Shown in pieces: positions 1-42,800 of a DNA stretch of 52,972 nucleotides. The notes under the pieces were generated by a model that saw only the letters and a list, made by a program, of their open reading frames with translations, ran no database searches and was not told the DNA's origin. The position numbers were made by a program, and so were the translations under genes. Numbering within the stretch: the stretch's first letter is position 1; the number at the start of each line of letters is the position of its first letter. The stretch is taken from NCBI GenBank assembly GCA_904063045.1, contig CAJFCJ010000007.1:4567867-4620838 (forward strand). Direction: 5' to 3'. This stretch comes from Dimorphilus gyrociliatus. Taxonomy: Eukaryota > Animalia > Annelida.

Positions 1-3000
1 AACAGACCTGCAAAAAAAAAAGGTTTTTTTTGTTTTTAGAAAATTTCATAAGAAAAGGTCAAGGTCACAAATACCTATAACTGCTAAAAGTAGCCAAATT
101 AAACAGTTTGATATGAAGAAAATATATACTGAGAGTTTCATTGATACATTCCTTTTTGAACGGACTTTTGATGATCTCAATACAATAATCATATGAATGT
201 ATAAAACCAGAACAACAACAGTAATCATTGGTAGGAGAAAAGTGAAAACAACCATTGGATATATCCATTCTTCATTATAATTATTCACTGGAAATATATT
301 AAAACAAAATGGCGAAACACTGTAAATTTCCTTATTTATCATTATTGGTATAATGGATAATACTGCAGCAAAACAACTTCCAACAACTATTTGACAAGCC
401 TTTCTAGAAATTTTCCACTTTTCAAAAGGTTTTGTTATTCCGTAATATCGCTCAATCGCTAAAAGTAAAAAACTAATTGATTGTAAAATTATCGAAAATA
501 TTATCATTGTTCCTAAAATTTTACATAAATTTGAATGTCTCCATTTAAAATCATTTTCTAAATATTTCTTTAAATAGATTTTATTAACAACAACTATTGA
601 TAAAATAAAACCGGAAATACCAAAATCACTTATTGACAATAACAAAATAGTAAATTTTGATTTATCTTTAGTTTTTAGGTATATAGAAAATGAAATTACA
701 TTGAGTAAAACACCAAAAATTCCAATTATCCATAAAACTATTTCTCTAAATTTTACATTCAAAAAACTTGAACACCTTAATAAAGATTCTTCAAAATGAT
801 CGCAATCAACATTAGAATGGATATAATTCCAAATAAAACAACAAAGTATAAAATGATGTTTACCAATGTATTGTAATGAATGCAGATGTTTGGCAATATG
901 CCTAAATGACTGTTGAGGAAGTTGAGTATTATTCAAATAGAAATATGTTAATTTATTCAAATTTCGAAAAGATTTTCTATGAATATTCATTAATTTACAA
1001 TTTGAAATATCCAACTTTGTTAGATTTACAATTGTTGATAAATCATTTTCCAATATATTCTTTATTTTCGTTGATGATAAATTCAAATATCTGACATCTC
1101 TACATTGCAAAATATTCAACATTTCCAACGATTCTATTGGATTTTTAGACAAAATTAACGTTTGCAGCATTTTCATTGGTTTTGAAAGAATCAACGAATC
1201 AGACGTCAAGTTGTTGTCGATCAACGAAAGATAAAATAGATTTGGAAAATAATTTTGGAAATTTTCCAAATATTTTCCACTTTCTCTTAAAATTAAAATG
1301 GAAAGATGAATGGAATTTTTCAAAATGTCTTCTTCTTCTTCTCTTCTTATCCCTCCAGTCATGTTCACAAATTTTAAATATTCGACATTCTCTACGCTCT
1401 TGTTAGTTTTATGAAACGCTTCGTCATCTTCTTCCACTTTTGTGTAGTCGCATTGTAGAGAAAAAACATCAATTTGACGACAGAATTGGTGTGATATTTT
1501 TGGAAAATTACACAACAATTCGTCACTTCCGTCAATGCAATCGATATATCCGTCGCAAACTTTAGATAATTTAATAAATATTCTTTCTTTGTCGCATCTG
1601 AAAAATCCTTTTGCATAAAAATTTCCTGCAAAAATTCTCTTTTCATTCTTTTTTCTTTCCATCCATCTATATCTTTGTACTCTTACCGCAATCTATTTCA
1701 TCATCTCCATGGTAACACTGAACTATACCGTCACATACCTGCTCGATTGAGATACAATACTTTTCGTATCGGCACAAATATTCACCATAGTGACATTTTT
1801 CATGATTACATCGATACAAATTAAACATCATGGTTATTGGATACCCGGATGTTGACATGCTGTAGTAACATCCTAATGTTCTAATCCCTTCTATGTAATT
1901 GTGATATGGTGACAAATCATGAATATTATATCCTTCATCATTCTCTTTATAGCAATCCCTTTTCCCATCATTAATATATGCGGCATGAACACAAGTTAAA
2001 TCACAGTTAATTTGTCTATTAGGATGACAAACTAAAGGAGAAAGAGTGAACATATTAATTATAAAAATGATTTTCGGCATAATACCTTTTCTATGTGAAT
2101 ATTGATAATTAGACAATAATTTATGATTAATGATTTCATCACTTCGATCAAAGCAGTCCAAACGATTATCTAAAATCTGATCTCTTAGAATACACTGTTT
2201 AGTATTTTCGCAATGAACATGTGATTCATTTGAACATAATGAAAATGCTTTTTTGTTTTTTTGAAGAATAAAAACAAAGTATTAATTTAATGAGATTAAT
2301 TAATAGCAAATGTTTTTTTACTGCAATTTTGTTCATCAGAACCATCTAAACAATCATTGACATGATTACAAAAATCATAATATACAATTTTCTCTCCATT
2401 TGAACAAATAAATGAAAATTTTTTTTCAATATTACATTTTTCAATATTTTCAGTATTCTGACAATTTGAAATATTCTTGCAAGATAGAATTGAATGAATG
2501 TAGAAATTATTCTCTTTGCAGAGAAAAAATTTATCTGTTTTTTCCTAAGGAAAGATTTTTTTATTGGGCAAGAGAAATATTTTAAAATGTAGACATAGCT
2601 ACTAATAGAATTTTTGTTTCTTTGGAATTTAAAGGAGGACGAATAGAAATGGAATTTCCTTTGTTATATTTAATTTTCTGACATATCATGAAATAAAAAA
2701 GTTTTTTTTCACACTTAATTTCTTTTACAGATATATAATCTTGATTTTGAAGAGTAAATTTAATACAAATTCTTTTCATATCTTGTCTTTTTCTTAGCTT
2801 TTTAGCAATATTTAAACTATTTGAGTTCTGAAGATATATTTAAAAAACAAAAAAAATAATTTTACATCGCCAAAACAATTTTACACCTAACATTCATACT
2901 TTGTATGGAATCATATATGGTAAATTCATAGTTAATCCATTTGATGTTATCAATTCAGGTAAGGACAGTTTGTTTATAGTCCATTTTAAAAATAAAAAAT

Positions 3001-7749: not shown

Positions 7750-10700
7750 ATGGAATCATCAACTATTAGCTACACAATGAATTACTGTTTTAATCACACA
7801 ATTACAGTATTTCTTTTTATTGTTTTCAGTATTAGTTATCATTTACAAGCGAGAAAAATAATTGGAAAATTAGCAATTCATATAAGACAAGAAAATTCGG
7901 AATATGTTATTGCACAATTAGAATTAATAGCAAAAAACAACATTTCTTATAAAGTAGCATTTTCTAAATCAGATACCAATCAAACTGATAATGGTCATCT
8001 TTGCAAAGTTTTTAATTTTGATGGTACTATAATGACTTTTTTTGAAACCATGTTTTATTATGGAGAAGGTGAAATTGTGGAATTTGAAAAAAATTCCTGT
8101 TCAGAAAGAGTTTGTAGTCTGTAAGTTTTAACTTTTAAATCAGATAAAATATCCCTAGACATTTAGTTGGACGAATAGGCTTAAATGCAATTGGGGATGT
8201 TTTTTCTGTTTTTTGAACTTTTTCTTACATTTTAATACTTTTCTATAGTTTCTTAAGTGATTATGCATCAGTTGGTTCTCAATTTCATGTATTTAAATGT
8301 TACAAGAAAAAATGTAAGATACTATGTACAAAAATATATAAATAATATAATTACCATTTCTATAGTCATATTCACAATGTCTAAACAAAATGTTTACTTT
8401 CTCTATTATAAATTTGAAAATCAAATTTTTAAAATACATAATAACAATAAGAATGATAATAAAAGATTATATCTTTGTAAAACTTCAGCAATCAATATTT
8501 ATTCATTTATGAAGTTAAATAATTATTTTTTGAAAAAATTGAATAATGGCGGATTTATACAAATAACTGATGAAAGAAATAGAGAATTTAAAATTTTAAA
8601 TGCTAGTAATTCAAATAATTATAGACAAGAATTTTGCACTTTCCAACAGCTTGATGGTAAAATATACATAAATTAAAAGATTAGCTGAAACAAAGAATAA
8701 AAAATAGGACATTTTCTATCAGTAATGTCTGTTAAAAAAATATATTTTTTTTCAACACAGATTTAAAATTGAATGATCAAGTAAATATTCAAGAAGAATA
8801 CACATTCATTTCAAAATCAGGGCGTACTATCAAACCATATTTTTCAAACAATATTCACCTTTTAACTGCTTGTTTATACATTTGTAATAATTTACTTAAT
8901 AGCTTACAAGTTGCAAATTGTGAATATAAAGATTCTAGTATTGATGGTCTATCAATTATTTTCCATGGTTGTAAAATACAAAATGGTAGTGTTAAATTTT
9001 GTTTTATTGAAAAACTTGAAGTTTCTAAACAATACTATTTTGCTATTGCCACTTGTAAACAAAATGTTAACATTTGTAAGGACAAAATATAATTGTTATC
9101 ATATCAGTTTTTGTATTAAAATTACCTATTTTTATACAAAATAAATAAAAGTTCTAAGTATCATAAATTGGAAAGAATTAATTATAATTCCTGAAATTAT
9201 TGAAACTACTCAAGTCTATGATGTTTTTCAATTAAAAGTAAAAACTAAGAACAGTGATAATTCATTATTATTAGATATTAGGCATACAAATGTTGGAAAA
9301 GAATTTCTTTTAAAAATATGTTCTATATTTAAATATGACACTATTTTTGTAACTTCAATATTGTCAATACAAAGATTTACTGACAAAATAACAGCAACAC
9401 TGTTAGATGGAGTTGAAGATATTTATGTGTAATAACAATAATAATATATAAAGAAAACCACTTTTTCATTCTTTCTTCAGAGCTTTCATAAATAAATCAC
9501 TTTCTAAAATGTCTATAAAATGTTTCAAGAAAAATCAACAATGTAAAAATTTGAAATATTCTGAAAATTCTTCTTTTTAAAAAATTCATTTCTAGACTTT
9601 TTTTCACGATACAAAGGAAACTATAGTTATAATTTAATATATAGAATAAATTCAACACAGTATTTTGTTCATGGGTTAGAGAATGAGAGGAAAGATATGT
9701 GTAAAAACAGTTTTTTCAATTTAAAATACAATTATGATTTTACCTCATTAAAAATTTCAAAACAAAAAATTTATTTAAAATATTCAATTCTAAATGAAAA
9801 ATATGAAAATTTAATAAGATTGAATAATTCGAAAAGAATAACTTGTCTTTTCTCTGAATTAGATGGTTCGAGTATTCAATTCCTTTTTCTTTGAATTTAA
9901 AAGATGTAAATAGTAATAATAACAACAACAGAGATTTCATTTAATAGAATTGCAAGATCTTGTGATGAGCACACATATTTGAACTCAAAAACATACGGAA
10001 TACTTAAATCAGTCTTTTTACAAAATATATTTTTTTATTCTATTGTCAAATATGCATTATCAGACTTTAATTATGCTTGTTATTTTCTATGTAATTCTGT
10101 AAATATGGAAATGGTGGAAGGTTCCAAATGTTGTATATTAACAGATGAAGAAGTGCAAATAATGATTGTTTTTATCTAAATAATGAAGAAAGATAATATA
10201 TTATAGTTTTCTTGTTTTTTGTTGTTTTCAAGGTTGACGAAATAGAATATATTTTTGACTGTAGGGAGAGTTTGTTTGAAGGATCTGAAATACTTTGCGA
10301 TATAGGACATTTTAATCATACACATCGTTATTATACTGTCAGACCAAACTGTAGGCCAAAATCTATAAAAAATGATAAAAGTAGAATAAATATTAAAATC
10401 TTAAATATATAAAAAAGATTTTTTTCTAGTTAGACTAAACAAAAAAAAAATATCAACTGAATTTTCAAAAACAAGTAATACGTTATCTGGTTCAATGAGT
10501 GTCTTATATTTGAACAGATATTGGGCTTTTCTTAGATATATCAATTCATTTACATTGAATAAAATTTGTTCATTTTTTGGTTTTAATTATGGTTCAATAA
10601 AACTTCCAAAATTCTCTTCTAGAAGAAAATCCTATGGATATAATCTAGTTATTGATACAGTTGTTTGTTTTGAAGATTCTTCAAGCATTGATGATTGCAA

Positions 10701-13700
10701 ATTAATTTTATCTAGAGAAAAGTAGTTTGTTTTTCGATAATTCATTTTTTAATATTTAAATAATTGCTTTTTCAACTTCAACAACAATAAGGAAAAATCC
10801 AGAAGGAAACTCATTAAAGAAATACAACACAAAATGGTTTCATTATAATATTCAATGTTCAAAGACTAGATCAATTGATAAGCATTTAATTTACCAATAT
10901 AAGAATTTAATACCAATTTATGATAAATTCTATTATATTCAATCATTTGACAAACTCTATTCTGTAATGCAATTAAAAGATATGTGTAATAAACTTAACC
11001 TGTCACTTGTTGATTATCAATCTTCGAATAAGGTTTATCTGTTGAGCATTTTAAAACAGGCAATCAGTTTAGATCTTCATTATGTTACTGATTATCTTGG
11101 TGAATTCGGTATGAATATTGTTTATTATGAATTTTAAACAGAGAAACTACACTAAAATAATATTTACACAAATAAAGAATTCATTAAAATGAAAACTAGA
11201 AAATCATTTACTGAAGTAACCACAACAAATGGTGTAAGTTTAACTATACCATTTGCAAGATCAAATTTAGAATTGGTTTAGTATTTTATAAAATAATAAT
11301 AATTTAATCATTTTTTGGGACAGTAAAAGATTTGTAAAACACACTAAAAGTCTATATGATTTCACTATAGAGAGATTTAATTAACATGTTAAACAACTGC
11401 CCAAATTTTTAAAACTGAAAAGAATTGATTGTATATCTACTTTTTTTTTTCTCTTAGCCCAAAAATATTGAAGTAATATATGAAGACATTGAGAAGAGTT
11501 CATCAACTTGCTTCAGACTAGTTCATTCTGAGGTAGACATATTTTACAAGTATTATTTGAACTAAATTAAAACAGGAGATTCATTTCTATAGAAAGATGT
11601 GAATAAAATTGAATTTCATAAAATATCTTGTACACAAAAAGTAAGCAGATATTTAGCTTGTCAAACTCAACAATGTGAGATTTTTTTTAAAAAGAAGGCT
11701 TAAAAATTATCCTAAAAGCCTTTTATCAATCTTTTTCTGTTTGCCTCTGTCTCTGTTTCAGTTGAAAGAAATTCTATAAGACAAATCTCACCAGTTAATC
11801 AAAAGGAAATGAAACTTGGAAATATTATTCATTGTCAACAACATGATTTCTATATAAATATAGTCAATATATGCCACAATCCAGATTGTCAAATACATAA
11901 ATCATTTGTTCATTGTTCATACCACAAAACATTAACATTTCAATGTCAAACAACTAATCAAACAATCAGTTTCTTACTTGTATGCAATCACAATAAAGAA
12001 TGTCTAGATGGATCTGATGAAAAAGATTGTGGTAAAATTTATACAAAAAATCTTACAACTCTGACAATTTTTTGTACTATCCAAAAATAATTTTAGTTTA
12101 TCAAGCTTGCACCAAAACTACACATTTTCCTTATCCTAGTCAATGTTTACAGGAAGGAGCCAAAGGAGATTATCAAAGAGTGTGTTTTAATCAATTTCTT
12201 GACTTTCAGAAAATTCATCAGTCAAAACAGTTGTCTGAAAGAGCTAGAACAATAGGTCTACTGTTTGTGAGATCATATTCATGTTATTACAATATTTCAA
12301 CATGTGGACAACCTATGACAAACTTATTCAAACGCAACAAATGCAAACAAAGACAGTGTCCTTATGGTGAATATTTGTGCCGATACGAAAAGTATTGTAT
12401 CTCAATCGAGCAGGTATGTGACGGTATAGTTCAGTGTTACCATGGAGATGACGAAATAGATTGCGGTAAGAGTACAAAGATAAAGATGGATGGAAAGAAA
12501 AAAGAATGAAAAGAGAATTTTTGCAGGAAATTTTTATGCAAAAGGATTTTTCAGATGCGACAAAGAAAGAATATTTATTAAATTATCTAAAGTTTGCGAC
12601 GGATATATCGATTGCATTGACGGAAGTGACGAATTGTTGTGTAATTTTCCAAAAATATCACACCAATTCTGTCGTCAAATTGATGTTTTTTCTCTACAAT
12701 GCGACTACACAAAAGTGGAAGAAGATGACGAAGCGTTTCATAAAACTAACAAGAGCGTAGAGAATGTCGAATATTTAAAATTTGTGAACATGACTGGAGG
12801 GATAAGAAGAGAAGAAGAAGAAGACATTTTGAAAAATTCCATTCATCTTTCCATTTTAATTTTAAGAGAAAGTGGAAAATATTTGGAAAATTTCCAAAAT
12901 TATTTTCCAAATCTATTTTATCTTTCGTTGATCGACAACAACTTGACGTCTGATTCGTTGATTCTTTCAAAACCAATGAAAATGCTGCAAACGTTAATTT
13001 TGTCTAAAAATCCAATAGAATCGTTGGAAATGTTGAATATTTTGCAATGTAGAGATGTCAGATATTTGAATTTATCATCAACGAAAATAAAGAATATATT
13101 GGAAAATGATTTATCAACAATTGTAAATCTAACAAAGTTGGATATTTCAAATTGTAAATTAATGAATATTCATAGAAAATCTTTTCGAAATTTGAATAAA
13201 TTAACATATTTCTATTTGAATAATACTCAACTTCCTCAACAGTCATTTAGGCATATTGCCAAACATCTGCATGCATTACAATACATTGGTAAACATCATT
13301 TTATACTTTGTTGCTTCATTTGGAATTATATCCATTCTAATGTTGAATGCCATCCATCTTATTCAAAATTGATCAATTGTTTAACTATAATTAACAGTGA
13401 ATTTAAAAGAATTTTAATATGGATAATTACAATTGTTTATTTTCTTATTATTCTTGTAAACTTGACCTTATTTAAAGGTCAAAGATATTTTCTACTCTTA
13501 ATATTTCTTGATGAAATTGGATTTGTGTCTTATATTACTTGTATTCTGATTATTGATTTTAAATATTTGAAAAGTTACTTTTCAAATGATTCTCAATGGA
13601 GAAATAGTATTTTTTGTCAATCTCTTAGTTTTATTACAACATTTTCTATGTTGTTAAAACCAATGACCTTACTGTTTTGTGATTTTGAGTACTTCAATAA

Positions 13701-15006
13701 TTTACTTAAAAGGTTTTCTATTAAAAAAAGTCTTCAAATTTGTATAATTGTTCTGTTGATAAACTTTTTAATAAGTTTAGTTATATATTTTGATAGCAAA
13801 GTAAATTTTGAGATATTTTTATCTTTTAAATTTGAATTGTACTGTGATTTGATCTCTTTCTACAGAAAAATCATGCAATGACACCTTTCTGTTTTAATTT
13901 GCTTAGTAGAAATGAAGAGAAAGCTTCAATGTTTTTCTTTGTAATATTTTTTCTTCTTGTACCAATTTTCTATTTTTTGAAGTTAATTTTACTTTTAATT
14001 GATATTTTTTATTTTAAAAATTCAAAATATTCACCATTTCATCAAAAATGCTTTGAAATTGGATATGAAGAGAATAGAACTAATATTTCAATACTAACAT
14101 TTTTAAATTTTATAGCGTGGCTTTCACTTTCAATTTTAGGTTTATTTGTTTTTTTTTTGAATTTTTAAAATTTGATTAATGCTGATTCCCCTTTTTTTTA
14201 AATAGGTGTACTGACTTTGAGCAATGTAATATATCCAACAAGTAACATAACTCTTTGGATTGTTTTTATTTATTGGCCTTTAATTGCAATAATCAAACTT
14301 TCCATATGGTTAAAAATTGCAGTTACAAATAGAAGAATAAAGAGGAAACTAAGAAAAATTCAAGAAAGGTATGTACAGAGTAGTCATATACAAGTATGGT
14401 TAGCTAAATGAGGGGATGATTTTGAGGATAGATTAGTTAAGGATAAGGTGTATCCTAAGGTTTCCAAACACTAGTCAATTTAAATTTTATAGAACTGAAG
14501 TTACTGAAACTACTACCAGGGAAGAAACTGAAAAATGTTGAGTTTACATAAAATTTACTTTGATATGTTTCTTTTACTTTTTTTTATTAAAAAATAAATG
14601 TTTTCAGTTACAGAATTTGTGAATAATTTTGAAAAATTTCATTTAAAATTTCCTCCCTTTATTATAAAAAATCAAGATTTTACAAATTCAGAAATGTTTT
14701 ATAGAAATAATATATTTTTTATTTGTGCTAAAGCCATTTTTAAAGCATTGTCAGAAATTCATTGTCATAATTTTGCACTTCAAAAAGAAGTTACATTGGC
14801 GGATGTTTCTTTTGATGTATGAAAGTAAGAGAAAAAGCTAGAACAAGAGATAAGAATTTCTTTTTCTTTTTCAGGTGATTAAAAGGAAATTCTTTTTACA
14901 AATAAGTAATGTTGGTAAAGGGAGTAAAATAGCTAAAAGGAGAGATATTTTAAATGTGGGAATAGCATTAAGAAAAATACTCCAAAAGAGGACACAATTT
15001 TTATAA
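7750..15006 (+). CDS. Receptor gene B: SRCR-like/lectin-like/LDLa/LRR ectodomain, divergent 7TM and spliced C-terminal kinase-like domain
   Basis: Hydrophobic N-terminus ITVFLFIVFSISYHLQA. SRCR-like ICSFFGF...VVCFEDSSSIDDC (10495-10725). CTL-like MCNKLNLSLVDY (~10980). LDLa CNHNKECLDGSDEKDC and two more in 12363-12640. LRRs and 7TM. Introns read with GT..AG and consistent phase: 12466-12526, 13801-13865, 14140-14205, 14369-14492, 14537-14607, 14817-14874. First stop in this model at 15004-15006. N-terminal exons not fully resolved. Confidence 0.85.
12363..13346 (+). repeat. Inverted repeat copy 2 (984 bp), partner of 806-1789
   Basis: Differences from copy 1 at 12452, 12483, 13273, 13313 and 13316 only; 12484-13272 (789 bp) is identical. 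Confidence 0.97.
14493..15006 (+). CDS. Gene B terminal exons: 44-nt linker exon (14493-14536) plus kinase-like C-lobe exons (14608-14816, 14875-15006)
   Basis: Translation RTEVTETTTREETEK-F-TEFVNN...ICAKAIFKALSEIHCHNFALQKEVTLADVSFD-VIKR...KIAKRRDILNVGIALRKIL resembles kinase alphaE/catalytic-loop/alphaF regions. No GxGxxG, VAIK, HRD or DFG motif is recognisable. Confidence 0.7.
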
Positions 15007-16757
15007 ATCTATGTATATCTTTTTGTTTTGTTTAGTTATTTTTATTAGTTTTGAAATAGAAACAAATTTCTATTTTTTTACATAATATTTGAAAAAATGA
15101 TATTCATATTCAAATTTCAATATACAGTGTATGTTTAATTGCATGCATATATTCACAAGTTTATCTTTAGAAGTGATGACAATCTTGCATAGAAACAATA
15201 GTTTAGAGATTTTTGTATAGAATAAAAAGATCGATTCATTAAATATGAATGAGCACGTGGTGGTAAAACAAACACTTAGATTAGTCTTGCTGAAAGAACT
15301 CAGCCTAAATGAATGCTCACCAGATTATTTTTATCAATCTGTGATTGCTAGACTGTAACCCTAAGTGCAATAACTATTTCTATTCTTATATATATATACA
15401 ACTTATAACAATTCCACTACCTAATCTATGTAAGAAAACACAACAACATTCAGTCAAAATATATTTTAATTAGTCATGCTAAAGGCTCAACTTTTATTAC
15501 GGATAAGGTGTGGCCCAGTCATAATTCATAATAATTAGCCCACCTAAGTGTAGGACTGGCTTTTATACATTTCCTTATCAGTTGTTTATGCTTTAGGTGT
15601 CAACAGAAAGGGTCTAATCGCCAGATAAGGATTGTTCACCACAAACAAGATCAAGGATATCATGTTATGAAATAGTGATGTAAACAACAACAGGTTTTGT
15701 AGGTAAACCCTCAAGGGTCAATTGTTACATCATGTTTATGTAAAAATAAACCTTGGCTGTTGTTGTCAAAAAGTTTGGTTATATTAGGTTTATCCTTTCT
15801 TTTACCTATAAAAGGGTTGATTCTGGTAGTTCAGTACCATCTACCCTAGAGGCAACATCTACTCCAGCACTTTTACCACCTAGTAAGTATCATTCATATG
15901 TAAATCTATTAGCTATAGTTCACAAATGTACAAGTTTGACACAATGATATTTCTCACTTAGCCTTTGTGCATGTTGAATTTAATGTTCAGCTAAATTTCT
16001 TGATTTTTCAACAATTTGACCTTTGAGTCTCATTATCCCAAGAAGGCACTTTGCCCTTTCGCAATCTAAAAAAATTAATGGATAATTTCATAACACAAGA
16101 CTTCCTCTTCTGTCTGCCATATATTGTGAACAAATTGTTTCATCTTTAAAAAGGGGCTCAGACAGGCAATTAAAACAGTAAAAAAAGTTACTGATCAATT
16201 GACTTTACTGACTACCACTGAAGAGGACTTGGACTTAAATAGGTAAATTAGGTTAGGATAGGAACTGCTATTATAGATAGTAGTTTTCTAATAGCTGCAC
16301 TAATCTAGGCCTAACAAGCTTTTAGCGTGTGTGCAACAAGTGGTCTGTCAATCAGTCTGTGATTGCCAGACTATAACCCTGAGTGTAATAACACTTTTTT
16401 TGGCTATTTCTGAGTTCAAAAATAAATTGAAACAAAGAAATAAAAGTATAAAAATCTCTGTTGTTGATTTTTATGACAAAGAAATTATTTTAAATAGACT
16501 TGTTATTTGACAACAGACTAGTTTTATTTGAATAAATGAAGTTAAAAGAGGTTTTGTAGCAAAGTGTACTAACACTGTGCTGTTTTACTTATACATTTTG
16601 TGTTAAAAATAAAATCTAAACAGAGAATTAACAGTAAATATCTTTAAGATCCTGCTGAATACAATCTTTACAATTGAATGAAGGGAACCTGTTTTAAGAC
16701 TTTAGCAATAAATTGATTATACATCTAGATATTCATCAGATAAGCTTCTTGATTTCT

Positions 16758-21705: not shown

Positions 21706-24261
21706 ATGGCGGCGACCAATAGCTATATAATTGATGAAGAAAATCTGATATGCGCCATTTGTTTGGATATATGGCTGGAAAAGGATCCGAGAATTTTACC
21801 CTGTCAGCATACATTCTGCAGAGAATGCCTGGAAAAGTTAGCCATTCACAATACGCAAATTACGTGCTGTTTGTGTAAAGTAAAGCATAAAATTCCTAAA
21901 GGCAAAATAGTAAAGATTAAAAAGAATAGTTTAAAGAGTTCTCTTCAAAATGTATCAACTGTTGAAAAGCTATGTATAAAACACAAAAAAGAGGCGTCGC
22001 TCTATTGTAAAACTCATAAAATTGTCGATTTATGCTCTAAATGTTGTGAAATCAACCATTTCGAATGTGATATTAATACAATGAAAAATCAAGAAAAACG
22101 TCTAAAACTAATGAATTCCTACGAAGAAAGTGAAAAGGAAATGATTAAAAATCAACTCAAAGAAATTGACGATATTGAAATTATTTGGATAAATAAGATT
22201 AAAGAACAATTTCAACTGATTAAAAAGCAATTAGATACCATTGGTAAGAAGAAGATTACAGAATTTAAGAATGTACTGCAAAATCTACACTGCAATGAAA
22301 ATTTAAAAGAATTAATAGACATATTTTTAAAAGGCAAAACAAATGTAAAATTATTAAACGAACCGGAAGTTTGTTATAAAATTGAGCAATTCAATAGGAA
22401 AACACTATATTCGTTTCGAGCGGAAAAAGATTCATCAAACTCTTTCATAGATTTTTCGCAAAACTGTAAAAATACTGACGATGTACAAAGATTAATGAAA
22501 CTTTTAGAGGGAAACACTAAAATAGAAACAATAGATATATCTAATAATATTAAAGTGGGCGATAATCTAAGAGAAATTTGTGAACAACTGCAAAATTCAT
22601 CGAATTCATTAAGGGAGATTATCTTTGAAAAATGTAATTTAAACGAACAACAATGTTTTTATATCGGAAAAATGCTTTTAAAATGCTCTAGAATTGAAAG
22701 TATAAGGCTTGGTGGTAATTCCAATATGGGAAATGGATTATTATATATTTGCGAAGGTGTTGAATCATTTGTAAACAGTTTGAAAAGAATTAATTTCAAC
22801 TATTGTCAATTCAATAATCATCAATGCTATTTTATTAAAAATCTCTTGTTAACTTGCTCAAACCTCGAAGTAATTGATCTGGGACAGAATAGAAATATGG
22901 GAGATGATGGCCTACAGGAAATTTGCCAGTCGTTAGAGAAATCTTCCAACTGTTTAAAGGAAATTAACTTTTATTGTTGTAATTTAAATGAGAAACAATG
23001 CAATTCTATTGGAAAATTGTTAATGAATTGCTCCAAAATTGAATTGATAAATTTAGCTTGGAATTTCAATATGGAAAATGGATTGAATAACATTTGTAAT
23101 GGACTTTCTCATTCTGTCAACAGTTTGACAGTTTTAAATTTTGCTTTGTGCAATTTGAAAGAAAAGTCTTGTAGCCTTATTGAAAATCTATTAAAGTCTT
23201 GTTGTAATATTGAAAAAATTAACTTATCAGAGAATAAAGAAATGGGAAAAGGACTAATCTTAATTTGCCAATCACTAGAAAAGTCGGCCAACAGCCTTAA
23301 GGATATTGATTTATCTTTGTGTGATTTATCTCAGGATCAGTGTATCTCTATTGGTTGTCTATTGAAGAATTGTAGACGAATTGAGACCATTAATTTAGAA
23401 TTTAATGAAAATATGGGATTTGGCTTACTGTTTATTTGCTTTGGTCTTCAAATCTCGTTAAATAGTTTGAAAGAAATCAATTTCGCTTCGTGTAATATTA
23501 ATGAGAGTTTGTGCTCAATTCTTGAGACTCTTTTCTCTTCTTGCTCCAAAATTGAGATTATCAATCTATCTAATAATAGAAATATTGTTAATGGATTGTA
23601 CATTTGGGAAGGGATTAGAAAATCATTTAGCACTTTAAAGAAAATGAATTTTGACGCATTTCATCTGCAATTACGCAATTTACTCCAGAATGTACTCAAC
23701 ACTAATGGACGTTACTTATTAATGAACAACAGCAATTGGTCATCTTTTGACGAAATATGGAATGAAAATATGACTGACGGAATAATAAATGTTTGCAAAG
23801 GATTAGAAAACTCGTCAAATAATCTAAGAGAAATCAATATCAGTTCGTCAAATTTGAATAGAAATGTATGCCATCACATTATGAATATGTTGAAAAAGTG
23901 CTCAAGAATTGACACTATAAATATTGGGTTTAATGAAAATATTGGAAAAGATGGACTTTTTGACATTTGCCAAGGTTTGGAAAACTCTGTCAACACTTTA
24001 AAGGAATTGGTTTTCACTTGTTGCAATTTAGATGAGAATAAATGCAAAATTATTGGAAATTTATTAATAAAATGCTATAAAATTCAAATAATAAACTTGG
24101 CATTGAATAGAAATATGGAAACTGGTTTGCTGTGTATTTGCGACAAACTACAAAATTCAGCAAACAATTTAAAAGAAATTAATGTTGAATGTTGTAATTT
24201 ATACGATTCTCTGGCGGAAAATATCAGTTACCAGTTTACAAACTGTACAGTAAGAATATAA
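21706..24261 (+). CDS. Intronless 851-aa RING / B-box / coiled-coil protein with C-terminal ribonuclease-inhibitor-type LRR array (TRIM-like E3 ligase)
   Basis: C3HC4 RING CAICLD...PCQHTFCRECL...CCLC. B-box-like CIKH...CKTH...CSKCCEINH. Helical KE-rich segment. About ten ~57-residue alternating LRR units (NSLKEINF..C.L / C..IE.I.L..N). Open, uninterrupted ORF. Confidence 0.93.
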   Translation: MAATNSYIIDEENLICAICLDIWLEKDPRILPCQHTFCRECLEKLAIHNTQITCCLCKVKHKIPKGKIVKIKKNSLKSSLQNVSTVEKLCIKHKKEASLYCKTHKIVDLCSKCCEINHFECDINTMKNQEKRLKLMNSYEESEKEMIKNQLKEIDDIEIIWINKIKEQFQLIKKQLDTIGKKKITEFKNVLQNLHCNENLKELIDIFLKGKTNVKLLNEPEVCYKIEQFNRKTLYSFRAEKDSSNSFIDFSQNCKNTDDVQRLMKLLEGNTKIETIDISNNIKVGDNLREICEQLQNSSNSLREIIFEKCNLNEQQCFYIGKMLLKCSRIESIRLGGNSNMGNGLLYICEGVESFVNSLKRINFNYCQFNNHQCYFIKNLLLTCSNLEVIDLGQNRNMGDDGLQEICQSLEKSSNCLKEINFYCCNLNEKQCNSIGKLLMNCSKIELINLAWNFNMENGLNNICNGLSHSVNSLTVLNFALCNLKEKSCSLIENLLKSCCNIEKINLSENKEMGKGLILICQSLEKSANSLKDIDLSLCDLSQDQCISIGCLLKNCRRIETINLEFNENMGFGLLFICFGLQISLNSLKEINFASCNINESLCSILETLFSSCSKIEIINLSNNRNIVNGLYIWEGIRKSFSTLKKMNFDAFHLQLRNLLQNVLNTNGRYLLMNNSNWSSFDEIWNENMTDGIINVCKGLENSSNNLREINISSSNLNRNVCHHIMNMLKKCSRIDTINIGFNENIGKDGLFDICQGLENSVNTLKELVFTCCNLDENKCKIIGNLLIKCYKIQIINLALNRNMETGLLCICDKLQNSANNLKEINVECCNLYDSLAENISYQFTNCTVRI

Positions 24262-26734: not shown

Positions 26735-26970
26735 TGTTGAAGATCGGTTCTTCTACGATTACGAACTATGTATATTTACTGTCGGTAACCGTATCAAACG
26801 GTTGCTGTATTCTAATGACCAAAGCTAATAATTATCACGTGTGGATACATGTGATTATGTAACTACGAGATTACATCTTGTCGTATGACACATGAGACTT
26901 GATACTTATGTATATATATATGTCTGACCACCACAACAACACCTACTGATCGTGATCAGGTTCTCAAACA
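26735..26970 (-). repeat. 3' LTR (236 bp)
   Basis: Aligns with 33746-33995 with 12 substitutions plus a (TA)5 versus (TA)12 length difference. Confidence 0.95.
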
Positions 26971-26984
26971 CTCACCCCCCCCCC
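26971..26984 (-). promoter_or_regulatory. Polypurine tract (GGGGGGGGGGTGAG) priming plus-strand synthesis
   Basis: Purine-rich run on the minus strand immediately upstream of the 3' LTR start TGTTTGAG. Confidence 0.75.
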
Positions 26985-27009
26985 TAAAGAACCTCGTGGT
27001 TTCGGGACC

Positions 27010-29528: not shown

Positions 29529-29544
29529 TAATCCTCGTGTTTCT

Positions 29545-33544: not shown

Positions 33545-33745
33545 GTTAATTTCTTACGCTCACTTAATATAACTTAGACTTATTCCAGGAGAGGAGGTTG
33601 AATTGTCCAATTGAGAAAAAAAGAATGTTCGATTCTTTTCTTTCGAACGTTCCAAAAAAAAGAAAAGAAAAAAAAGAACTGCAGAACAATTTCTTAATTG
33701 GATTCTCGTATATTCGCTTAGAATATCCTTGCTTACATTTGATAC

Positions 33746-33995
33746 TGTTGAAGATCGGTTCTTCTACAATTACGAACTATGTATATTTACTGTCGGTAAC
33801 CGTATCAAACAGTTGCTGTATTCTAATGACCAAAGCTAATAATTATCACGTGTGGATACACATGATTACATAACTACGAGATTACGTCTCGTCATATGAC
33901 ACATGAGACTTGATACTTTTGTATATATATATATATATATATATATGTCTGACCACCACAACAACACCTACTGATCGCAATCAGGTTCTCAAACA
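33746..33995 (-). repeat. 5' LTR (250 bp)
   Basis: TGTTGAAG...CTCAAACA, matching 26735-26970. Confidence 0.95.
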
Positions 33996-37962: not shown

Positions 37963-39486
37963 TATTCATAGTTCATTTTCATATATCATCATGATTTTAA
38001 ACTAAGAAGAGGTGACTTTCTATCATAAATTACATATTTGCTTCAACATATTTAATCTTAATTATACTCCAAAAAGTTAATCTTTTGGATTCTTTAGCCG
38101 CTTTCATAATAGCTTTTATAATATCTAATCATTATTATCAGCAATTTTTTCATTATTCATGCGCATAATCGAAAAAATATTGTCTATTCATCGACCTTTT
38201 GCGAGTTGAACAGTTGAATATTTCTAGACAACTTTCTACATAATGCTTAATAAACAATGGTATTTATAGATAATTTTAATAATTAAACAGCTTTTTATGT
38301 GAATTTTCTCCAATTATTTACTTATGTGATATTGTATTTTCAGCATTTTCGTTTCAGAACAATATCAATTATAACAGAAGACTTAAACAAAGCATTATCA
38401 AAGTGACCTTCATTTTCTCCATTATAACAGATATAACAAAATGCTGATAATATGTAAAACAAAGCTATCAAGGCACACTTCCTATTTCAAACAGTATTTT
38501 ATATACAGTCAGAGACGTGTGATACCTTTTTTTGACAATTTTTACTATTTTGAAAAGTGCAATTTGTCTTTACGCAATAATTTTTTAGTAATAACTCTAA
38601 TTCCATAGATGTCTTTGTTTTCTTCATATTTTGTCATCCTTATAAATAATATCAGCCAATTTCAAATTAACTTTAACTGACATACGACTTTTATATAAAT
38701 TTGAAATTAGAAAGATAATATCTTTGTATATATTTATATTTACACAAACTTTTCAATTATTTAATTATGTTCAAAATAGAGAAATAGGCAGATATTTATC
38801 AGTAAAGATAATCAAAAGCTAGTTTATTCAAAATATTAGCAAGGCAAGTTGACTGCAGTTCAACTGTCTCTATCAAATTTTCAGCCTGATTCAGGATGTG
38901 TTCTGGGTCTTCTGTGCCAGACTCACTCCACAACACCTGCCACACGCTCACAGAAGAATACAAGAAAACAATAAGACTATGGTTGTAGATATATATTTAG
39001 TATCAAATAACCTTTTTTTTCAGAAATCAGTTTTCTCATTCCTCACCGAAACCCCATCCTACAAACCCAACTAAAATATTAACAAAGTGGCAAAATGTTG
39101 TTATTTCATTTATTAAAAAAAAATAGTTTCTATTCATAGAAGACATATTTTCAATTTTTATTTTGTCTTTGATGAAATGAAAGCATTTCTCTTTTGTAGA
39201 ATTTTTCTTACTACCATTCCCAATGATGAAATATCTTTTTTTTCACTTTCCACTGTTTTGAAACTGACATTTTTCAAATCTATATTAAAAGTTTTTTCTT
39301 TCTCCTAGAAAAGTAATATAATATAATATATTATGTCAATCTCTCTCTAATATATTTATTAAACTTGTTGGAATCCAACAGAAAGGCTACCCATGTGTTC
39401 TGGATCCTTTAAAATGGATCCATAACTTACTAAACTGGTGTTATTGTTTTTATGGTAAAAAAAATGTTATAGCTGAGAATCATCCA

Positions 39487-39891
39487 CTAAAAAGTTCTGC
39501 CCTCATTTAACTGCCTACATCTAATTGCAATTTTTGGGAATTTATTCTGTCGCCTCCATACTAGTTGTTGTAAGCCACTAGCCTCATAAAAAACGTCATC
39601 TAGGTTAAACTCTCCATTCATAGAAAAATCTTGTGAATGAATGAACATAAATGCATTTGTAAGTTGCAAGCAGCAATAAATCCATTTGTTTGTGAAAAAG
39701 AATGACTTTTGAATGTCTAATTTATGAAAGGAACCTTGTAAATCATAAAGGAATAGATAATTACTTTTTCTTTTTCTCAGAAGAGAAGTAACTGAAAAAA
39801 AGATAGAATTTTAATTAGGTCAATTGTGAAAATGTGTTCTTTTCTACATTTCTTATAATTATCTATTGATACCATCTTAATCAAGTCATTT
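39487..39891 (-). CDS. Gene C terminal exons: 44-nt linker exon (39848-39891) plus kinase-like exon (39487-39791)
   Basis: RNDLIKMVSIDNYKK-F-TSLLRKRKSNYLFLYDLQGSFHKL...CCLQLTNAFMFIHSQDFSMNGEFNLDDVFY...KIAIRCRQLNEG follows the kinase subdomain V-VIb pattern (YLV.E...GSL; Q...AL.FLHS...HGDL..NV). Confidence 0.72.
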
Positions 39892-42800
39892 CTGGTATAT
39901 TTTGATGAAAAATTTTGGAGATTAACAACAAAATAAAAGAAACAAAAAGAAAAATATTAGAAGACCTTTTTTGGATGGAATGTGACTTTTTTTCAGATAA
40001 TGTGGAAAAAAACTCTTCAACAATTGAAATAATAGGATTTATTATTGAATTTAACGGCAGGAGTAGGGAGATCATTAAACTATAGACATCATTTTTTATT
40101 GTTATATCATTCATTAAGGATAGTATTCCTATATAGAAAATGGGAACATTATTGACATAGATAGATGGATAGAAAACTCACTGACCCATCACTGAAAATG
40201 GTAGCCAAACAGCCAAATTTGAAAATGTTAGTATTTTAATACTAACTTTAACATTCTTGGAAGGATTATCTAAATTTCTATTCTGTGAAAATTTCTTGCC
40301 AAGTTTTCTTACAACAAAAATTAAATGAATGTATAAAATTGAAATGAAAAAACTAAAAAGTGGTATAATTATTCCAAAGAGAATGAATGATAGAATCCAT
40401 CCATCCTGTTTCTTGCTCCTTATATGAACATTGAAACAGACTGGTGTATGACTGAACACATTCTAATATAAGATTTATACTTTTGTTATTAATTGACTGT
40501 AAACTTTTGACAAAAACATCTTTCTTACTCGATTTACAATCAAAGGAACTGCAGATACTAATATTGAAACTGTAGTTGTACAAGCTATTGCCCTTTTTGA
40601 ACAGACAATCAAAACGATATTGCCAAATGGATTGGTGATTGCCTGGTGTCTTTCAAATGTCATGATTACCATACTGATTGTTGAAATGAGCAAAGAAAAT
40701 GTCATCATTGTCCCTAAGGTTTTGCATAGCAAACTATTACGCCAATATTCATCATGTTCAAGGTAAGTGCCAAAGAAATATAGATCAGTAATATCTAAAG
40801 AAAGAATGTAGAGAGATGTTAACAAATTGCCAATAATTAAAAGTAGATGAAAATATTTTGAATTTGAATTTTTCTTTGATGCAAATATCAATTTTAAAGA
40901 AAGTAAATTTCCAATAATTCCCAATATTCCATAAAACCAATAGAGAGCTCTCTTAAAATTTGAGCTTATTAAACTGGAACATGTGTGGAATATAGCAGAA
41001 GATGGTTCGCATCTGATATTTTTCCCTAGAAATTTCCAACAGAAACAGCAAAGTATATAACTATTTCCATGGACAATTTTCACTTTGTTTAAGTATTTAA
41101 TAACATTACGAAGATATACTGTTGGTATTTTTGAATTGTTTAGGATGAGAACAATAATATTAGGGAATTTTGAAAATGTTTCACTTTCAATCATTTTTAT
41201 ACGACAATTCATCATTTTGAAAAGACGCAGATGTGGATTGAATTTTAAATGAATTGAACGTATTGATTGAATATTTGTATTAGAAATATCAAAATATAAT
41301 AAATTGGAGCTGTTTAAAACATTTAAAAATGATAATGAGCTAATCATCATATTCTGGCCTATATATAAATATTGTAAAATGTTTAATGGCTGATTTAGAA
41401 ATTCTGTTCCATCAGTTAAACTACTATTGAAAATATTCAAATAGACAAGATTTGGTGTTTTAACAACAATTTCATTCAAATATCCAGGATTGTTGTTTAT
41501 TTTCAAATATGTTAGTGATTTTGTATTTGGAATAATTGAAAGTTGAAAATTCCCATCAAAAATCAATGTTTTAATTTCATCTATTCCTTGGCTCTTTGTA
41601 GGAAATGATTTTAAATTTTTTAGCCAAGTTCTTCCTTTACAGATCAAGGTAAAAAAGTTACTTTGATAACAGCCATTTAATTGAATATTTGGTGGAGAGC
41701 ATAAAATTTCATCACTTCCCTTTAAACAATCAACAATATCATTACATATTTGCTGCTGCACAAGGTATTTCGTTTCGTTTTGACATTTGAAAAATCCTTT
41801 TATTTGAATATTTTCTATCAGAGAAAAGATTAATGATTTTTTTCATTAACTAGAATGGTTTTTTTCTACCGCAATTGTCTTCATCATCCCCTAAGAAACA
41901 GTGATTTATTCCATCGCAAATGAGCTCCACCTCAATACAATAGTTATCTGTGGAACAAAGATAATACCCAGGTGGACAAGTGCGAATATTGCACAATTCA
42001 GTACGAGAGAAGAGATCTGTAAATATCTGCCCTTTTGAATTAGTGTTCACCATACATCTATAGTTTGGTTTTCTAGAAATACGTTCATCTTCTTTGTTAA
42101 AACAATCGTATTTTCCATCACCAACCAATTCAATGGGAAGACACTTTTTATTGCATTCGATTTGGCTATCGTTATTACAATCTGCCAGAGATAAAAAATT
42201 GTATTCAATTTTTTGTCAAGTTCGTCAAGTTGATAGTTTCTTTATACTTGTCTTGTAAGTTTCCAAAATGGTATCCTTATGAAAGCAGTTTTCATCGCTT
42301 TTGTCAAAGCAATGCATTTCATTATCGCATACCTTCTCAGATTTGATACATTGACTCTTGTCATTGCATAAACTAAAAAACTAGAAAAATGATTCAACTG
42401 GTTAGAAATTAGAGAAAATACCTATATCCTTTAGGGCACTTCTTCAGATTCTATTGAAAGGAAAAACAGAAAGGAAAATAACAAGAGATAATGAATACAA
42501 ATTTAAATAAGAATGGCTAGATAACAGGAAATTTTTGAAGTTAATAGTAATATACTAGTATTTTCTTTCCTATTCTCATTCAATTAGTTATGAATTATTT
42601 CTACTGCAAACCGCAAAAAATTTCATCTAATCCATTGGCGCAATCTTTGACATAATTGCAAACAAACACTGTGCTGATAGTTTCATTACGCAACAGGCAA
42701 TTGAACCTGTTTTTAGCTAAAGAAAAAACCGCATTGTTATCTGAACATAACCAATGAATTAATGATACTCACCCAGATTAGGTAAAACTGAAAAAGAATT

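What the first reader, a model, noticed from the sequence alone, without database searches (positions are those of the whole stretch)
14361..15006. GPCR spliced to a cytoplasmic kinase-like domain through a conserved 44-nt mini-exon (gene B)
Seen: the TM7/C-tail exon reaches CAA GAA AG|GTATGT (donor at 14369), so the ORF-track stop at 14411 is intronic. A 44-nt exon (14493-14536, phase 2 in, phase 1 out, ending AAA T|GT) follows, then an acceptor TTTTCAG|TT AC at 14608. Paralog C, whose sequence is otherwise highly diverged, has the same structure: CAA AAA AG|GT, a 44-nt exon ending AAA T|GT, and TTTTCAG|TT AC. Identical size and phase in two old paralogs is very unlikely by chance. Inference: the downstream exons encode a kinase-fold C-lobe without recognisable catalytic motifs, so the product is an LDLa-LRR-7TM-pseudokinase. 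Established: 7TM-enzyme fusions are known as GPCR-PIP-kinase fusions in oomycetes and Dictyostelium (RpkA), and kinase-homology domains occur in receptor guanylyl cyclases. I am not aware of a characterised animal class-A GPCR carrying a protein-kinase-like tail.
Basis: partly seen in the sequence, partly recalled or inferred. Interest (0 to 1): 0.93.

Follow-up and report, generated by a model that had tools for sequence, protein, structure and literature searches.

The report
Receptor gene with half-kinase tail
A hormone-receptor-like membrane protein of a tiny marine worm is spliced, through a 44-base mini-exon, to a short tail that looks like the back half of a protein kinase with its chemistry removed, and related receptors in several other animal phyla carry the same tail without it having been described in any paper I could find.

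Summary
The window is the last 52,972 bases of a Dimorphilus gyrociliatus (annelid) contig. Gene B is not annotated there, yet spliced contigs exist: one joins 14816 to 14875 exactly, and another leaves the TM7 exon at 14366/14368. Its depth fits a landing on the mini-exon.

The exon plan of 163 nt (TM7), then 44 nt, then about 210-230 nt, then about 132-147 nt is the same in B, C and two further paralogs on another contig. A relative from unrelated read sets shows the 163- and 44-nt exons before its contig ends. A limpet and a nemertean have a 52- and a 65-nt mini-exon at the same place.

It is only half a kinase: no N-lobe, no HRD or DFG aspartate. Gene B is the most decayed copy and shows no kinase signal of its own.

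First-reader notes flag similar fusions on other pieces of this genome. I found no paper describing this tail.

The parts
14206..14368 (+). Gene B, TM7 exon (163 nt). It ends in phase 2 (..CAA GAA AG|gt).
   Evidence: X2 contig record 11 covers 14203-14366 without mismatch and continues elsewhere on both sides. The same 163-nt size is seen in C, D, E and L007.
14369..14492 (+). Gene B intron (124 nt) holding the in-frame stop at 14409-14411.
   Evidence: GT..AG borders. The X2 bin depth fits a contig that skips this stretch.
14493..14536 (+). Gene B 44-nt mini-exon, phase 2 in and phase 1 out. It encodes a 14-residue charged linker.
   Evidence: The depth arithmetic on X2 record 11 places 40 nt of the contig on 14491-14530. 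Exons of 44 nt with the same phases occur in C, D, E and L007.
14608..14816 (+). Gene B exon 3 (209 nt). It is the counterpart of kinase alphaD, alphaE, catalytic loop and beta7, and is strongly degenerate.
   Evidence: Aligned with C, D, E and the GRL101 tails around one invariant His. X3 record 17 covers 14750-14816 and jumps to 14875. No Pfam hit, PDB-sequence hit or Atlas signal of its own.
14875..15006 (+). Gene B last exon (129 nt plus TAA). It is the counterpart of beta8 and alphaF, with motif D-I-x-x-x-G-x-x-x-R-K-I-L.
   Evidence: X3 record 17 and X2 record 12. Alignment A6. hhalign register against the GRL101 tails.
39966..40128 (-). Gene C, TM7 exon (163 nt).
39848..39891 (-). Gene C 44-nt mini-exon.
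39562..39791 (-). Gene C exon 3 (230 nt), the kinase alphaD-to-beta7 counterpart.
   Evidence: In the ESM Atlas, 63 of the 100 nearest clusters fall in the Pkinase / PK_Tyr_Ser-Thr set, top score 0.94. The whole C tail, this exon included, scores 11.7 bits against the HMM of GRL101 tails, above all 1000 shuffles.
39158..39304 (-). Gene C last exon (alphaF counterpart plus stop).
12490..13799 (+). Gene B large exon: LDLa, LRRs, hinge and TM1 to TM4 (the 3' border is approximate).
   Evidence: Pfam Ldl_recept_a and LRR_8 hits, but no 7tm_1 hit. Alignment with A and C shows the E/DRY arginine is lost.

Best explanation
Gene B is an unannotated, transcribed member of an expanded GRL101-type family (LDLa-LRR class-A 7TM) in the annelid Dimorphilus gyrociliatus.

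**Gene plan.** Its last four exons follow an ancestral plan.
- The first is the TM7 exon.
- The second is a 44-nt linker mini-exon.
- The last two encode a cytoplasmic module of about 115 residues.

**What the module is.** It is the core of a protein-kinase C-lobe: alphaD, alphaE, the catalytic-loop hairpin, beta7 and beta8, a shortened activation segment, and alphaF.

**Why it cannot be an enzyme.** It has no N-lobe, so it lacks the glycine loop, the VAIK lysine and alphaC. The HRD aspartate and the DFG aspartate are replaced. It cannot bind ATP in the kinase manner or catalyse phosphotransfer. The residues that are kept build the hydrophobic core: the Leu-His at the end of alphaE, the beta7 strand, and the Asp-x-x-x-x-Gly of alphaF.

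**Most likely function (inferred, not shown).** It is a folded, non-catalytic docking or oligomerisation surface hanging from helix 8. Through it the receptor would recruit or position a partner, as pseudokinase scaffolds such as VRK3, KSR and the RNase L or IRE1 kinase-homology domains do.

**Role of the mini-exon (inferred).** Because 44 is not a multiple of three, skipping it would shift the frame and stop translation after 6 codons in B and 10 in C. The exon could therefore act as an on/off switch for the tail.

**Gene B itself.** It is the most eroded copy. The E/DRY arginine and the NPxxY motif are gone, and the tail keeps only the alphaE and alphaF signature.
For: **Splicing.** Spliced contigs cover the tail exons, and the four exons give one open frame.

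**Conserved plan.** The exon plan is identical in B, C, D and E, and L007 shares the 163- and 44-nt exons. In Patella and Lineus GRL101 genes a 52- or 65-nt mini-exon comes before an exon that also starts in phase 1 after ..cag.

**Identity of the genome.** The window belongs to D. gyrociliatus GCA_904063045.1, and no gene is called over B.

**Homology of the tails.**
- B against C: z about 13.
- Four Dimorphilus tails against eight GRL101 tails by hhalign: P = 1.8e-4, in the expected register.
- C tail against the GRL101-tail HMM: 11.7 bits, above all 1000 shuffles.
- The tail bearers are named GRL101 or GRL101-like in Dinothrombium, Leptotrombidium, Tetranychus and Patella. Lineus and Acanthaster proteins carry it too.

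**Kinase nature.**
- Profile A4 against PDB sequences gives 111 hits, nearly all kinases, aligned on alphaD, alphaE, the catalytic loop and beta7. VRK3 scores 0.0011 and BRAF 0.005.
- Profile A7, which includes the Dimorphilus pieces, scores 1.1e-5 on VRK3.
- The AlphaFold2 model has pLDDT 87.8 and pTM 0.79.
- The Foldseek top 50 are all kinases, with TM by query 0.48-0.64.
- AlphaFold DB matches are kinase-like proteins and the C-termini of GRL101-like or class-A GPCR entries, TM 0.77-0.80.
- ESM Atlas features of the C and E exon-3 pieces point to kinase fragments, scores 0.94 and 0.95.

**Dead chemistry.** In the printed alignments the HRD and DFG positions hold Gly or Leu/Pro.
Against: **No direct fold test on the window's own tail.**
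- The model of the C exon-3 piece alone was poor (pLDDT 66) and its Foldseek matches were meaningless.

**The Dimorphilus sequences alone show no kinase similarity by HMMER.**
- Profiles A1, A2 and A5 found no kinase.
- Pfam finds nothing in any single tail.
- B alone scores -0.7 bits against the GRL101-tail HMM and is not recognised by the Atlas.

**The link from Dimorphilus to the other phyla is modest.** It rests on hhalign P = 1.8e-4 (probability 48%) plus shared position and exon plan.

**The model rests on thin data.** The alignment has eight rows, four of them mites, and both sides of the AlphaFold DB comparison are predictions.

**Other gaps.** Runs X2 and X3 are not labelled as RNA; I infer it from exon-only coverage. 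Function is wholly inferred.
Confidence: 0.72

Rival explanations
1. In gene B specifically, the tail and much of the receptor are a decaying relic. B would be a relaxed or pseudogenising paralog whose tail exons are still spliced but no longer do anything.
For: - The B ORF gives no 7tm_1 hit, whereas A and C do.
- The E/DRY arginine is lost and there is no NPxxY in TM7.
- The B exon-3 piece is not recognised by the Atlas, with recognition 1126.
- B scores -0.7 bits against the GRL101-tail HMM, a value reached by 301 of 1000 shuffles.
- Transcript contigs are of very low depth, 2-6.
- One X2 contig carries a 1-nt deletion at 14900.
Against: - The frame is open across four exons and 182 codons, and all splice sites are intact.
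- The gene is transcribed and correctly spliced in two runs.
- The alphaF-like motif R-K-I-L-Q-K-R is identical in B and C, and E carries K-K-I-L-Q-K-R.
- The X3 contig over the same place has no deletion.
Confidence: 0.25
2. The tail is a small alpha/beta domain of independent origin that only resembles a kinase C-lobe. The sequence hits would then be chance, or AlphaFold2 was drawn to the commonest similar fold.
For: - The E-values are modest: 1e-3 for the GRL101 tails alone and 1.6e-3 in Foldseek.
- The alignment is shallow, with eight rows.
- No Pfam kinase hit appears for any single tail.
Against: - The profile hits are almost exclusively kinases and all fall in the same register, from alphaD to beta7.
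- Adding four independent Dimorphilus sequences improved the best E-value a hundredfold.
- Atlas features of two tails that are 22% identical both point to kinases.
- A 158-residue AlphaFold DB entry with TM 0.76 to the model is itself named 'Protein kinase domain-containing protein'.
Confidence: 0.1
3. The product is a full LDLa-LRR-7TM-pseudokinase: a bilobal but inactive kinase domain.
For: In the AlphaFold2 model of the C exon-3 piece, two short strands come before the helices and could be read as beta4 and beta5. In the model of the mite tail one strand comes before alphaD.
Against: - Only about 45-60 residues lie between TM7 and alphaD. In every species they are charged or low in complexity and are not conserved.
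- No match to the glycine loop, VAIK or alphaC appears in any search.
- All matches begin at kinase residues equivalent to alphaD.
Confidence: 0.04

Closest known systems
GRL101 / type C2 leucine-rich-repeat GPCRs (first cloned from Lymnaea stagnalis; arthropod 'LGR5')
   Same: - LDLa repeats, LRRs and a class-A 7TM.
- The nearest named relatives are GRL101 or GRL101-like proteins.
- The tail and the plan of TM7 exon, mini-exon and two tail exons are shared with Patella and Lineus genes.
   Different: - The Dimorphilus genes are an expanded, fast-evolving set.
- By other first-reader notes they carry extra SRCR-like and lectin-like modules, which I did not test.
- B, C and E have lost G-protein microswitch motifs.
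- The literature treats the LGR tail as 'poorly conserved' and leaves it aside (PMC4079206).
- I could not check the Lymnaea founder sequence itself.
Pseudokinase scaffolds: VRK3, KSR1/2, STK40, ULK4, and the kinase-homology domains of RNase L and IRE1
   Same: - They give the best sequence hit (VRK3) and some of the best structural hits (RNase L, IRE1, STK40, ULK4).
- They are kinase folds that are mostly non-catalytic, or that act chiefly through binding and pairing.
- The VRK3 catalytic-loop region aligns well with the tail profile in the printed match.
   Different: Those proteins keep both lobes, and many still bind nucleotide. The tail here has only alphaD to alphaF.
GPCR-kinase fusions: GPCR-TKL/K of acanthoecid choanoflagellates, oomycetes and amoebozoans; GPCR-TK of choanoflagellates and sponges; GPCR-PIPK (PMC12716839, PMC5784254, PMC6033456)
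   Same: A 7TM domain is followed on the cytoplasmic side by a kinase-type domain. None of these fusions has been characterised functionally.
   Different: - Those carry complete kinase domains that Pfam detects, on 7TM domains that are not LGR-like.
[quoted passage not shown]
- Here the kinase part is a cryptic half domain on a bilaterian class-A LGR.
- No evidence links the two by descent.
Kinase-homology domain of receptor guanylyl cyclases
   Same: A dead kinase-type module sits between a membrane receptor and its cytoplasmic output (from my own knowledge, not tested here).
   Different: That domain is bilobal, binds ATP and regulates a downstream cyclase domain. Here nothing follows the module.
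Minimal kinase-fold proteins (Kdo kinase KdkA, InaA, Bud32, RIO kinases)
   Same: They are top AlphaFold DB Swiss-Prot and VIA-align matches, and their short C-lobes are of similar size to the tail.
   Different: They are complete, active two-lobe enzymes.

Membership tests
Protein kinase-like fold (eukaryotic protein kinase superfamily) | C-lobe core: alphaE, catalytic-loop hairpin, beta7/beta8, alphaF | tested here: met
Protein kinase-like fold (eukaryotic protein kinase superfamily) | N-lobe (five-stranded sheet, glycine loop, VAIK lysine, alphaC glutamate) | tested here: not met
   Every sequence and structure match begins at the alphaD equivalent. The 45-60 residues between TM7 and alphaD are unconserved linker.
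Protein kinase-like fold (eukaryotic protein kinase superfamily) | Catalytic residues: HRD aspartate, DFG aspartate, APE | tested here: not met
   In the alignments to BRAF and VRK3 the HRD positions hold Leu-Gly-Gly in the mites and other residues in Dimorphilus. The DFG position holds Pro-Glu-Phe or is absent, and the activation segment is shortened.
Protein kinase-like fold (eukaryotic protein kinase superfamily) | Significant sequence-profile similarity to kinases | tested here: met
   The family profiles score E = 0.0011 (A4) and 1.1e-5 (A7) on VRK3, with kinases dominating the lists. It is not met by the Dimorphilus-only profiles or by single sequences in Pfam.
GRL101-type (type C2) LGR | LDLa repeats plus LRRs in the ectodomain | tested here: met
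   Pfam Ldl_recept_a and LRR_8 / LRR_4 hits in the B, A and C ORFs.
GRL101-type (type C2) LGR | Class-A (rhodopsin-family) 7TM | tested here: inconclusive
   7tm_1 is found in A (2e-14) and C (3e-8) but not in the B ORF. B still aligns helix for helix with A and C and has seven hydrophobic segments, but it lacks the DRY arginine and NPxxY.
GRL101-type (type C2) LGR | Nearest relatives by sequence are GRL101 proteins | tested here: met
   A profile of A, B and C retrieves proteins named GRL101 or GRL101-like from mites, Patella and Patiria, among 6951 hits. No tree was built.
GPCR-kinase fusions (GPCR-TK, GPCR-TKL/K) | Complete, Pfam-detectable kinase domain C-terminal to the 7TM | tested here: not met
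   No Pkinase or PK_Tyr_Ser-Thr hit appears in any tail at E up to 10. Only the C-lobe core is present.
Pseudokinase | Complete kinase fold lacking one or more catalytic motifs | tested here: not met
   The catalytic motifs are indeed lacking, but the fold is incomplete because there is no N-lobe. 'Kinase C-lobe remnant' is the accurate term.

The most novel reading that the evidence does not exclude
GRL101-type receptors descend from an early-metazoan 7TM-protein-kinase fusion. They would have kept the kinase C-lobe for hundreds of millions of years as a second, G-protein-independent output arm: a docking or pairing module that recruits a kinase, phosphatase or adaptor. The non-multiple-of-three mini-exon would switch this arm on or off by alternative splicing. 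If so, the orphan GRL101 family would signal in a hybrid GPCR / receptor-kinase-like manner.
Probability: 0.2. Interest if true: 0.88.

Novelty: new variant of a known kind. Interest (0 to 1): 0.68.

Why it matters
**An orphan family gets a handle.** GRL101-type LGRs were cloned three decades ago and are spread through invertebrate phyla, but they remain orphans. A recent preprint proposes they are a second IGF receptor (10.1101/2021.04.15.440029). Work on LGR evolution set the cytoplasmic tail aside as poorly conserved (PMC4079206).

**What this adds.** The tail turns out to be a folded, ancient module built on half a kinase. That gives the family a concrete and testable intracellular handle, through partner searches, tail deletions and nucleotide-binding tests.

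**Wider context.** It extends the recently drawn map of 7TM-kinase fusions, which was said to stop at sponges within animals (PMC12716839), to bilaterian class-A receptors in a cryptic form that domain searches miss.

**Practical lesson for annotation.** Gene B is not annotated at all. Its paralogs on L001 are cut short before TM5 or reduced to an LDLa fragment, so the family and its tail are invisible in the public proteome of this genome.

Tried and rejected
1. **Pfam on all tail pieces and on eight GRL101 tails**, at E up to 10: no kinase family.
2. **PDB sequence search with Dimorphilus-only profiles:** the B+C exon-3 and last-exon profiles found nothing. The four-paralog exon-3 profile found three non-kinase chance hits.
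3. **The search for homologous proteins with the 428-aa C ORF:** nothing, because the length filter applies and the gene is not annotated.
4. **Tail-region searches:** with P0138 only the query itself came back. With P0122 three further mite proteins came back.
5. **phmmer of the B and C tails against the 150 representatives:** no hit. Pairwise scores of B or C against foreign tails are not significant, z at most 3. Only profile comparison links them.
6. **AlphaFold2 on the C exon-3 piece alone:** pLDDT 66 and meaningless Foldseek matches. The complete spliced tail could not be given by reference, and I did not type it.
7. **RNA run search:** none was listed. The 'any' search gave two runs that behave like transcriptomes.
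9. **P0118 (ENA, 902 aa):** it has a different, repeat-rich tail. P0088 (Patiria) has a low-complexity tail. Neither belongs to the module.
10. **Lymnaea GRL101:** it did not appear among the 30 AlphaFold DB Swiss-Prot matches shown. I draw no conclusion from that.
Full report
**Where the window comes from.** The intronless 851-aa ORF at 21706-24258 is recorded with exactly this product in Dimorphilus gyrociliatus assembly GCA_904063045.1, contig CAJFCJ010000007.1. Its coordinates place the window as the last 52,972 bases of that contig. With 10 kb flanks, the public annotation calls no gene over window 11706-15006, so gene B is unannotated there. This explains why a search with the 428-aa C ORF found nothing.

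**The observation.**
- The TM7 exon is 14206-14368 and ends ..AG|GTATGT.
- The stop at 14409-14411 lies in a 124-nt intron.
- The 44-nt exon is 14493-14536, followed by a 71-nt intron.
- Exon 3 is 14608-14816 and follows ttttcag. A 58-nt intron comes next.
- The last exon is 14875-15006.
- Spliced, these give one open frame of 182 codons.

Gene C on the minus strand has 40128-39966 (163 nt), 39891-39848 (44 nt), 39791-39562 (230 nt) and 39304-39158. Its two donors, GTCTTC and GTAGAA, are weak by the usual consensus.

**Transcripts.** No run was listed as RNA. Two runs found with kind 'any' cover only exon-sized pieces of the stretch, as transcriptomes do.
- X3 record 17 (183 nt, no mismatch) joins 14816 directly to 14875.
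- X2 record 11 (319 nt, depth 3.9) lies on 14203-14366 with 68 nt before and 87 nt after.
- The three letters before 14206 are the same as the last three of the upstream exon (..TAG at 14137-14139), so the start of record 11 is a splice from 14139.
- The X2 depth is 2.59 in bin 14137-14333, which equals 131 x 3.9 / 197.
- The X2 depth is 1.45 in bin 14334-14530, which equals (33 + 40) x 3.9 / 197. The contig therefore also lies on 14491-14530, the mini-exon, with two ambiguous letters.
- The remaining 41 nt fit the start of exon 3, but that joint was not displayed.
- X2 record 12 carries 34 nt ahead of 14875.

Gene B is thus expressed at low level and spliced as predicted. Two joints are shown or tightly inferred, and one rests on arithmetic.

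**Is the shared plan more than chance?** Three lines of evidence bear on this.
- *Tail similarity.* The B and C tails score 108 in local alignment against 31.9 +/- 5.7 for shuffles.
- *Paralogs elsewhere in the genome.* A profile search with the A, B and C ORFs led to a Dimorphilus protein, and from it to locus L001 on another contig. L001 holds two convergent paralogs, which I call D and E. Their unannotated 3' exons measure 163/44/209/135 and 163/44/215/141 nt, with the same phases and ..cag|TT-type acceptors.
- *A relative in other read sets.* A relative from two Logan read sets has GC 0.23 and no nucleotide similarity to the window. It also has 163 and 44 nt.

The mini-exon sequence itself is not conserved. 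It encodes a charged linker.

**The tail outside this genome.** Among the long annotated hits, several have 150-170 residues after NPxxY with no Pfam domain. Five of them share a pattern:
- a Leu-rich helix;
- a helix ending in Leu-His, then x-x-Gly;
- a strand ending (Asp/Asn)-x-Val-Phe;
- a final helix beginning Asp-Ile-x-x-Phe-Gly.

They are related to one another at z = 6 to 12. They are named as follows:
- GRL101 or GRL101-like in Dinothrombium, Leptotrombidium and Tetranychus;
- GRL101 in Patella vulgata;
- uncharacterised proteins in Lineus longissimus and Acanthaster planci.

The evidence tying the Dimorphilus tails to this module is as follows.
- Pairwise scores of B or C against these tails are not significant.
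- The C tail scores 11.7 bits against their HMM, above all 1000 shuffles (maximum 8.2). B does not.
- A profile of the four Dimorphilus tails aligns to the eight foreign tails at P = 1.8e-4 in the register seen by eye.
- In Patella and Lineus the tail is also encoded as TM7 exon, mini-exon (52 or 65 nt), a 230- or 266-nt exon that starts in phase 1, and a last exon of about 150 nt.

Position, exon plan and profile agree. I take the Dimorphilus tails to be the same module.

**Is the module kinase-like?** The sequence searches say the following.
- Single sequences say nothing in Pfam.
- The profile of eight tails, searched against PDB sequences, returns 111 sequences at E up to 10. Nearly all are protein kinases matched over alphaD, alphaE, the catalytic loop and beta7. 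The VRK3 pseudokinase scores 0.0011 and BRAF 0.005. ULK1, DAPK3, KSR1 and CLK1 follow.
- Adding the four Dimorphilus exon-3 pieces sharpens VRK3 to 1.1e-5.

The structure model and its comparisons say the following.
- AlphaFold2 on the mite tail gives pLDDT 87.8 and pTM 0.79. It has a strand, two helices, short strands and a long final helix.
- The Foldseek top 50 PDB matches are all kinase domains.
- AlphaFold DB gives kinase-fold proteins: Kdo kinase, InaA, Bud32, VRK3 and Dictyostelium kinases.
- Among AlphaFold DB fold clusters, the C-termini of entries named GRL101-like or 'GPCR family 1' match at TM 0.77-0.80. So does a 158-residue entry named 'Protein kinase domain-containing protein'.
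- By their accession style some of these entries are placozoan, amphioxus and coral proteins. That is my reading and was not checked by a tool.

In the ESM Atlas, the exon-3 pieces of C and E (22% identical) both have kinase fragments as nearest clusters, at 0.94 and 0.95. B does not.

**What it is not.**
- Nothing matches an N-lobe. The 45-60 residues between TM7 and alphaD are unconserved.
- The HRD and DFG aspartates are replaced and the activation segment is cut short.
- 'Pseudokinase' therefore overstates it. It is a kinase C-lobe core.

**Gene B.** B aligns helix for helix with A and C. However, it has no Pfam 7tm_1 hit, it has Phe-Glu-Tyr where A has Glu-Arg-Tyr, and it has no NPxxY. 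Its tail keeps the His at the end of alphaE and the alphaF motif. I give 0.25 to the view that B is drifting toward loss.

**Mechanism.**
- *Shown:* the exon structure, transcription and family-wide conservation.
- *Well supported:* the kinase C-lobe fold of the module, shown on the mite tail and inferred for the Dimorphilus tails, and the absence of catalytic equipment.
- *Inferred:* a non-catalytic docking or pairing role, by analogy with pseudokinase scaffolds.
- *Also inferred:* a possible splice switch. Skipping the 44-nt exon reads AG+T TAC AGA ATT TGT GAA TAA in B, which stops after 6 codons. In C it stops after 10 codons (read).

**Literature.**
- No paper in the searched library pairs GRL101 with pseudokinase.
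- An LGR evolution paper left the tail aside as poorly conserved (PMC4079206).
- PMC12716839 reports GPCR-kinase fusions in choanoflagellates and sponges, and 'not in other metazoan lineages'.
- First-reader notes of this scan flag similar fusions on other pieces of this genome. I tested the idea only on the window and on L001.

Noticed in passing
window 11706-15006: Gene B has no gene model in the public annotation of GCA_904063045.1, although spliced transcript contigs exist for it.
   Followed up: yes
L001 6001-13871: Two convergent paralogs, D on the plus strand and E on the minus strand, end tail to tail about 105 bases apart (stops at 9563 and 9670). The annotation cuts D after the large exon (706 aa) and reduces E to a 207-aa LDLa fragment. 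The TM5-TM7 and tail exons of both are unannotated.
   Followed up: partly
window 14900: One low-depth X2 contig (depth 2.17) lacks one base in a run of T in the last exon of gene B. That would shift the frame before the alphaF-like motif. The X3 contig over the same place has no gap. It could be a sequencing error or a strain difference.
   Followed up: no
window 10000-15900: Run X4 (2024) differs from the window almost only by C>T (304 places) and G>A (328 places), as bisulfite-treated DNA would. Every cytosine listed between 10055 and 10345 reads as T, so that stretch looks unmethylated.
   Followed up: no
window 15516-15900: Contig depth in the genome run X1 jumps from about 100 to about 9,500, with many variant copies and loose ends. 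This looks like a high-copy repeat just downstream of gene B.
   Followed up: no
window 49-1662 (-) and 12490-13878 (+): Genes A and B are identical in protein over the LDLa-LRR part, up to about alignment column 260. They diverge sharply from the hinge and TM1 onward, as a gene-conversion tract would produce. A keeps Glu-Arg-Tyr where B has Phe-Glu-Tyr.
   Followed up: partly
L006, L007 (Logan SRR23372228, SRR23372231): An AT-rich organism (GC 0.23) that I could not name carries a close family member with the same 163-nt TM7 exon and 44-nt mini-exon. It has no nucleotide similarity to the window.
   Followed up: partly
window 1-52972: The window is the terminal 52,972 bases of contig CAJFCJ010000007.1 (4,567,867-4,620,838).
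   Followed up: yes
window 27454-29160 (-): The public annotation calls a 394-aa FLYWCH-domain gene here. This overlaps the region that another first-reader note (26735-33995) treats as an LTR element.
   Followed up: no
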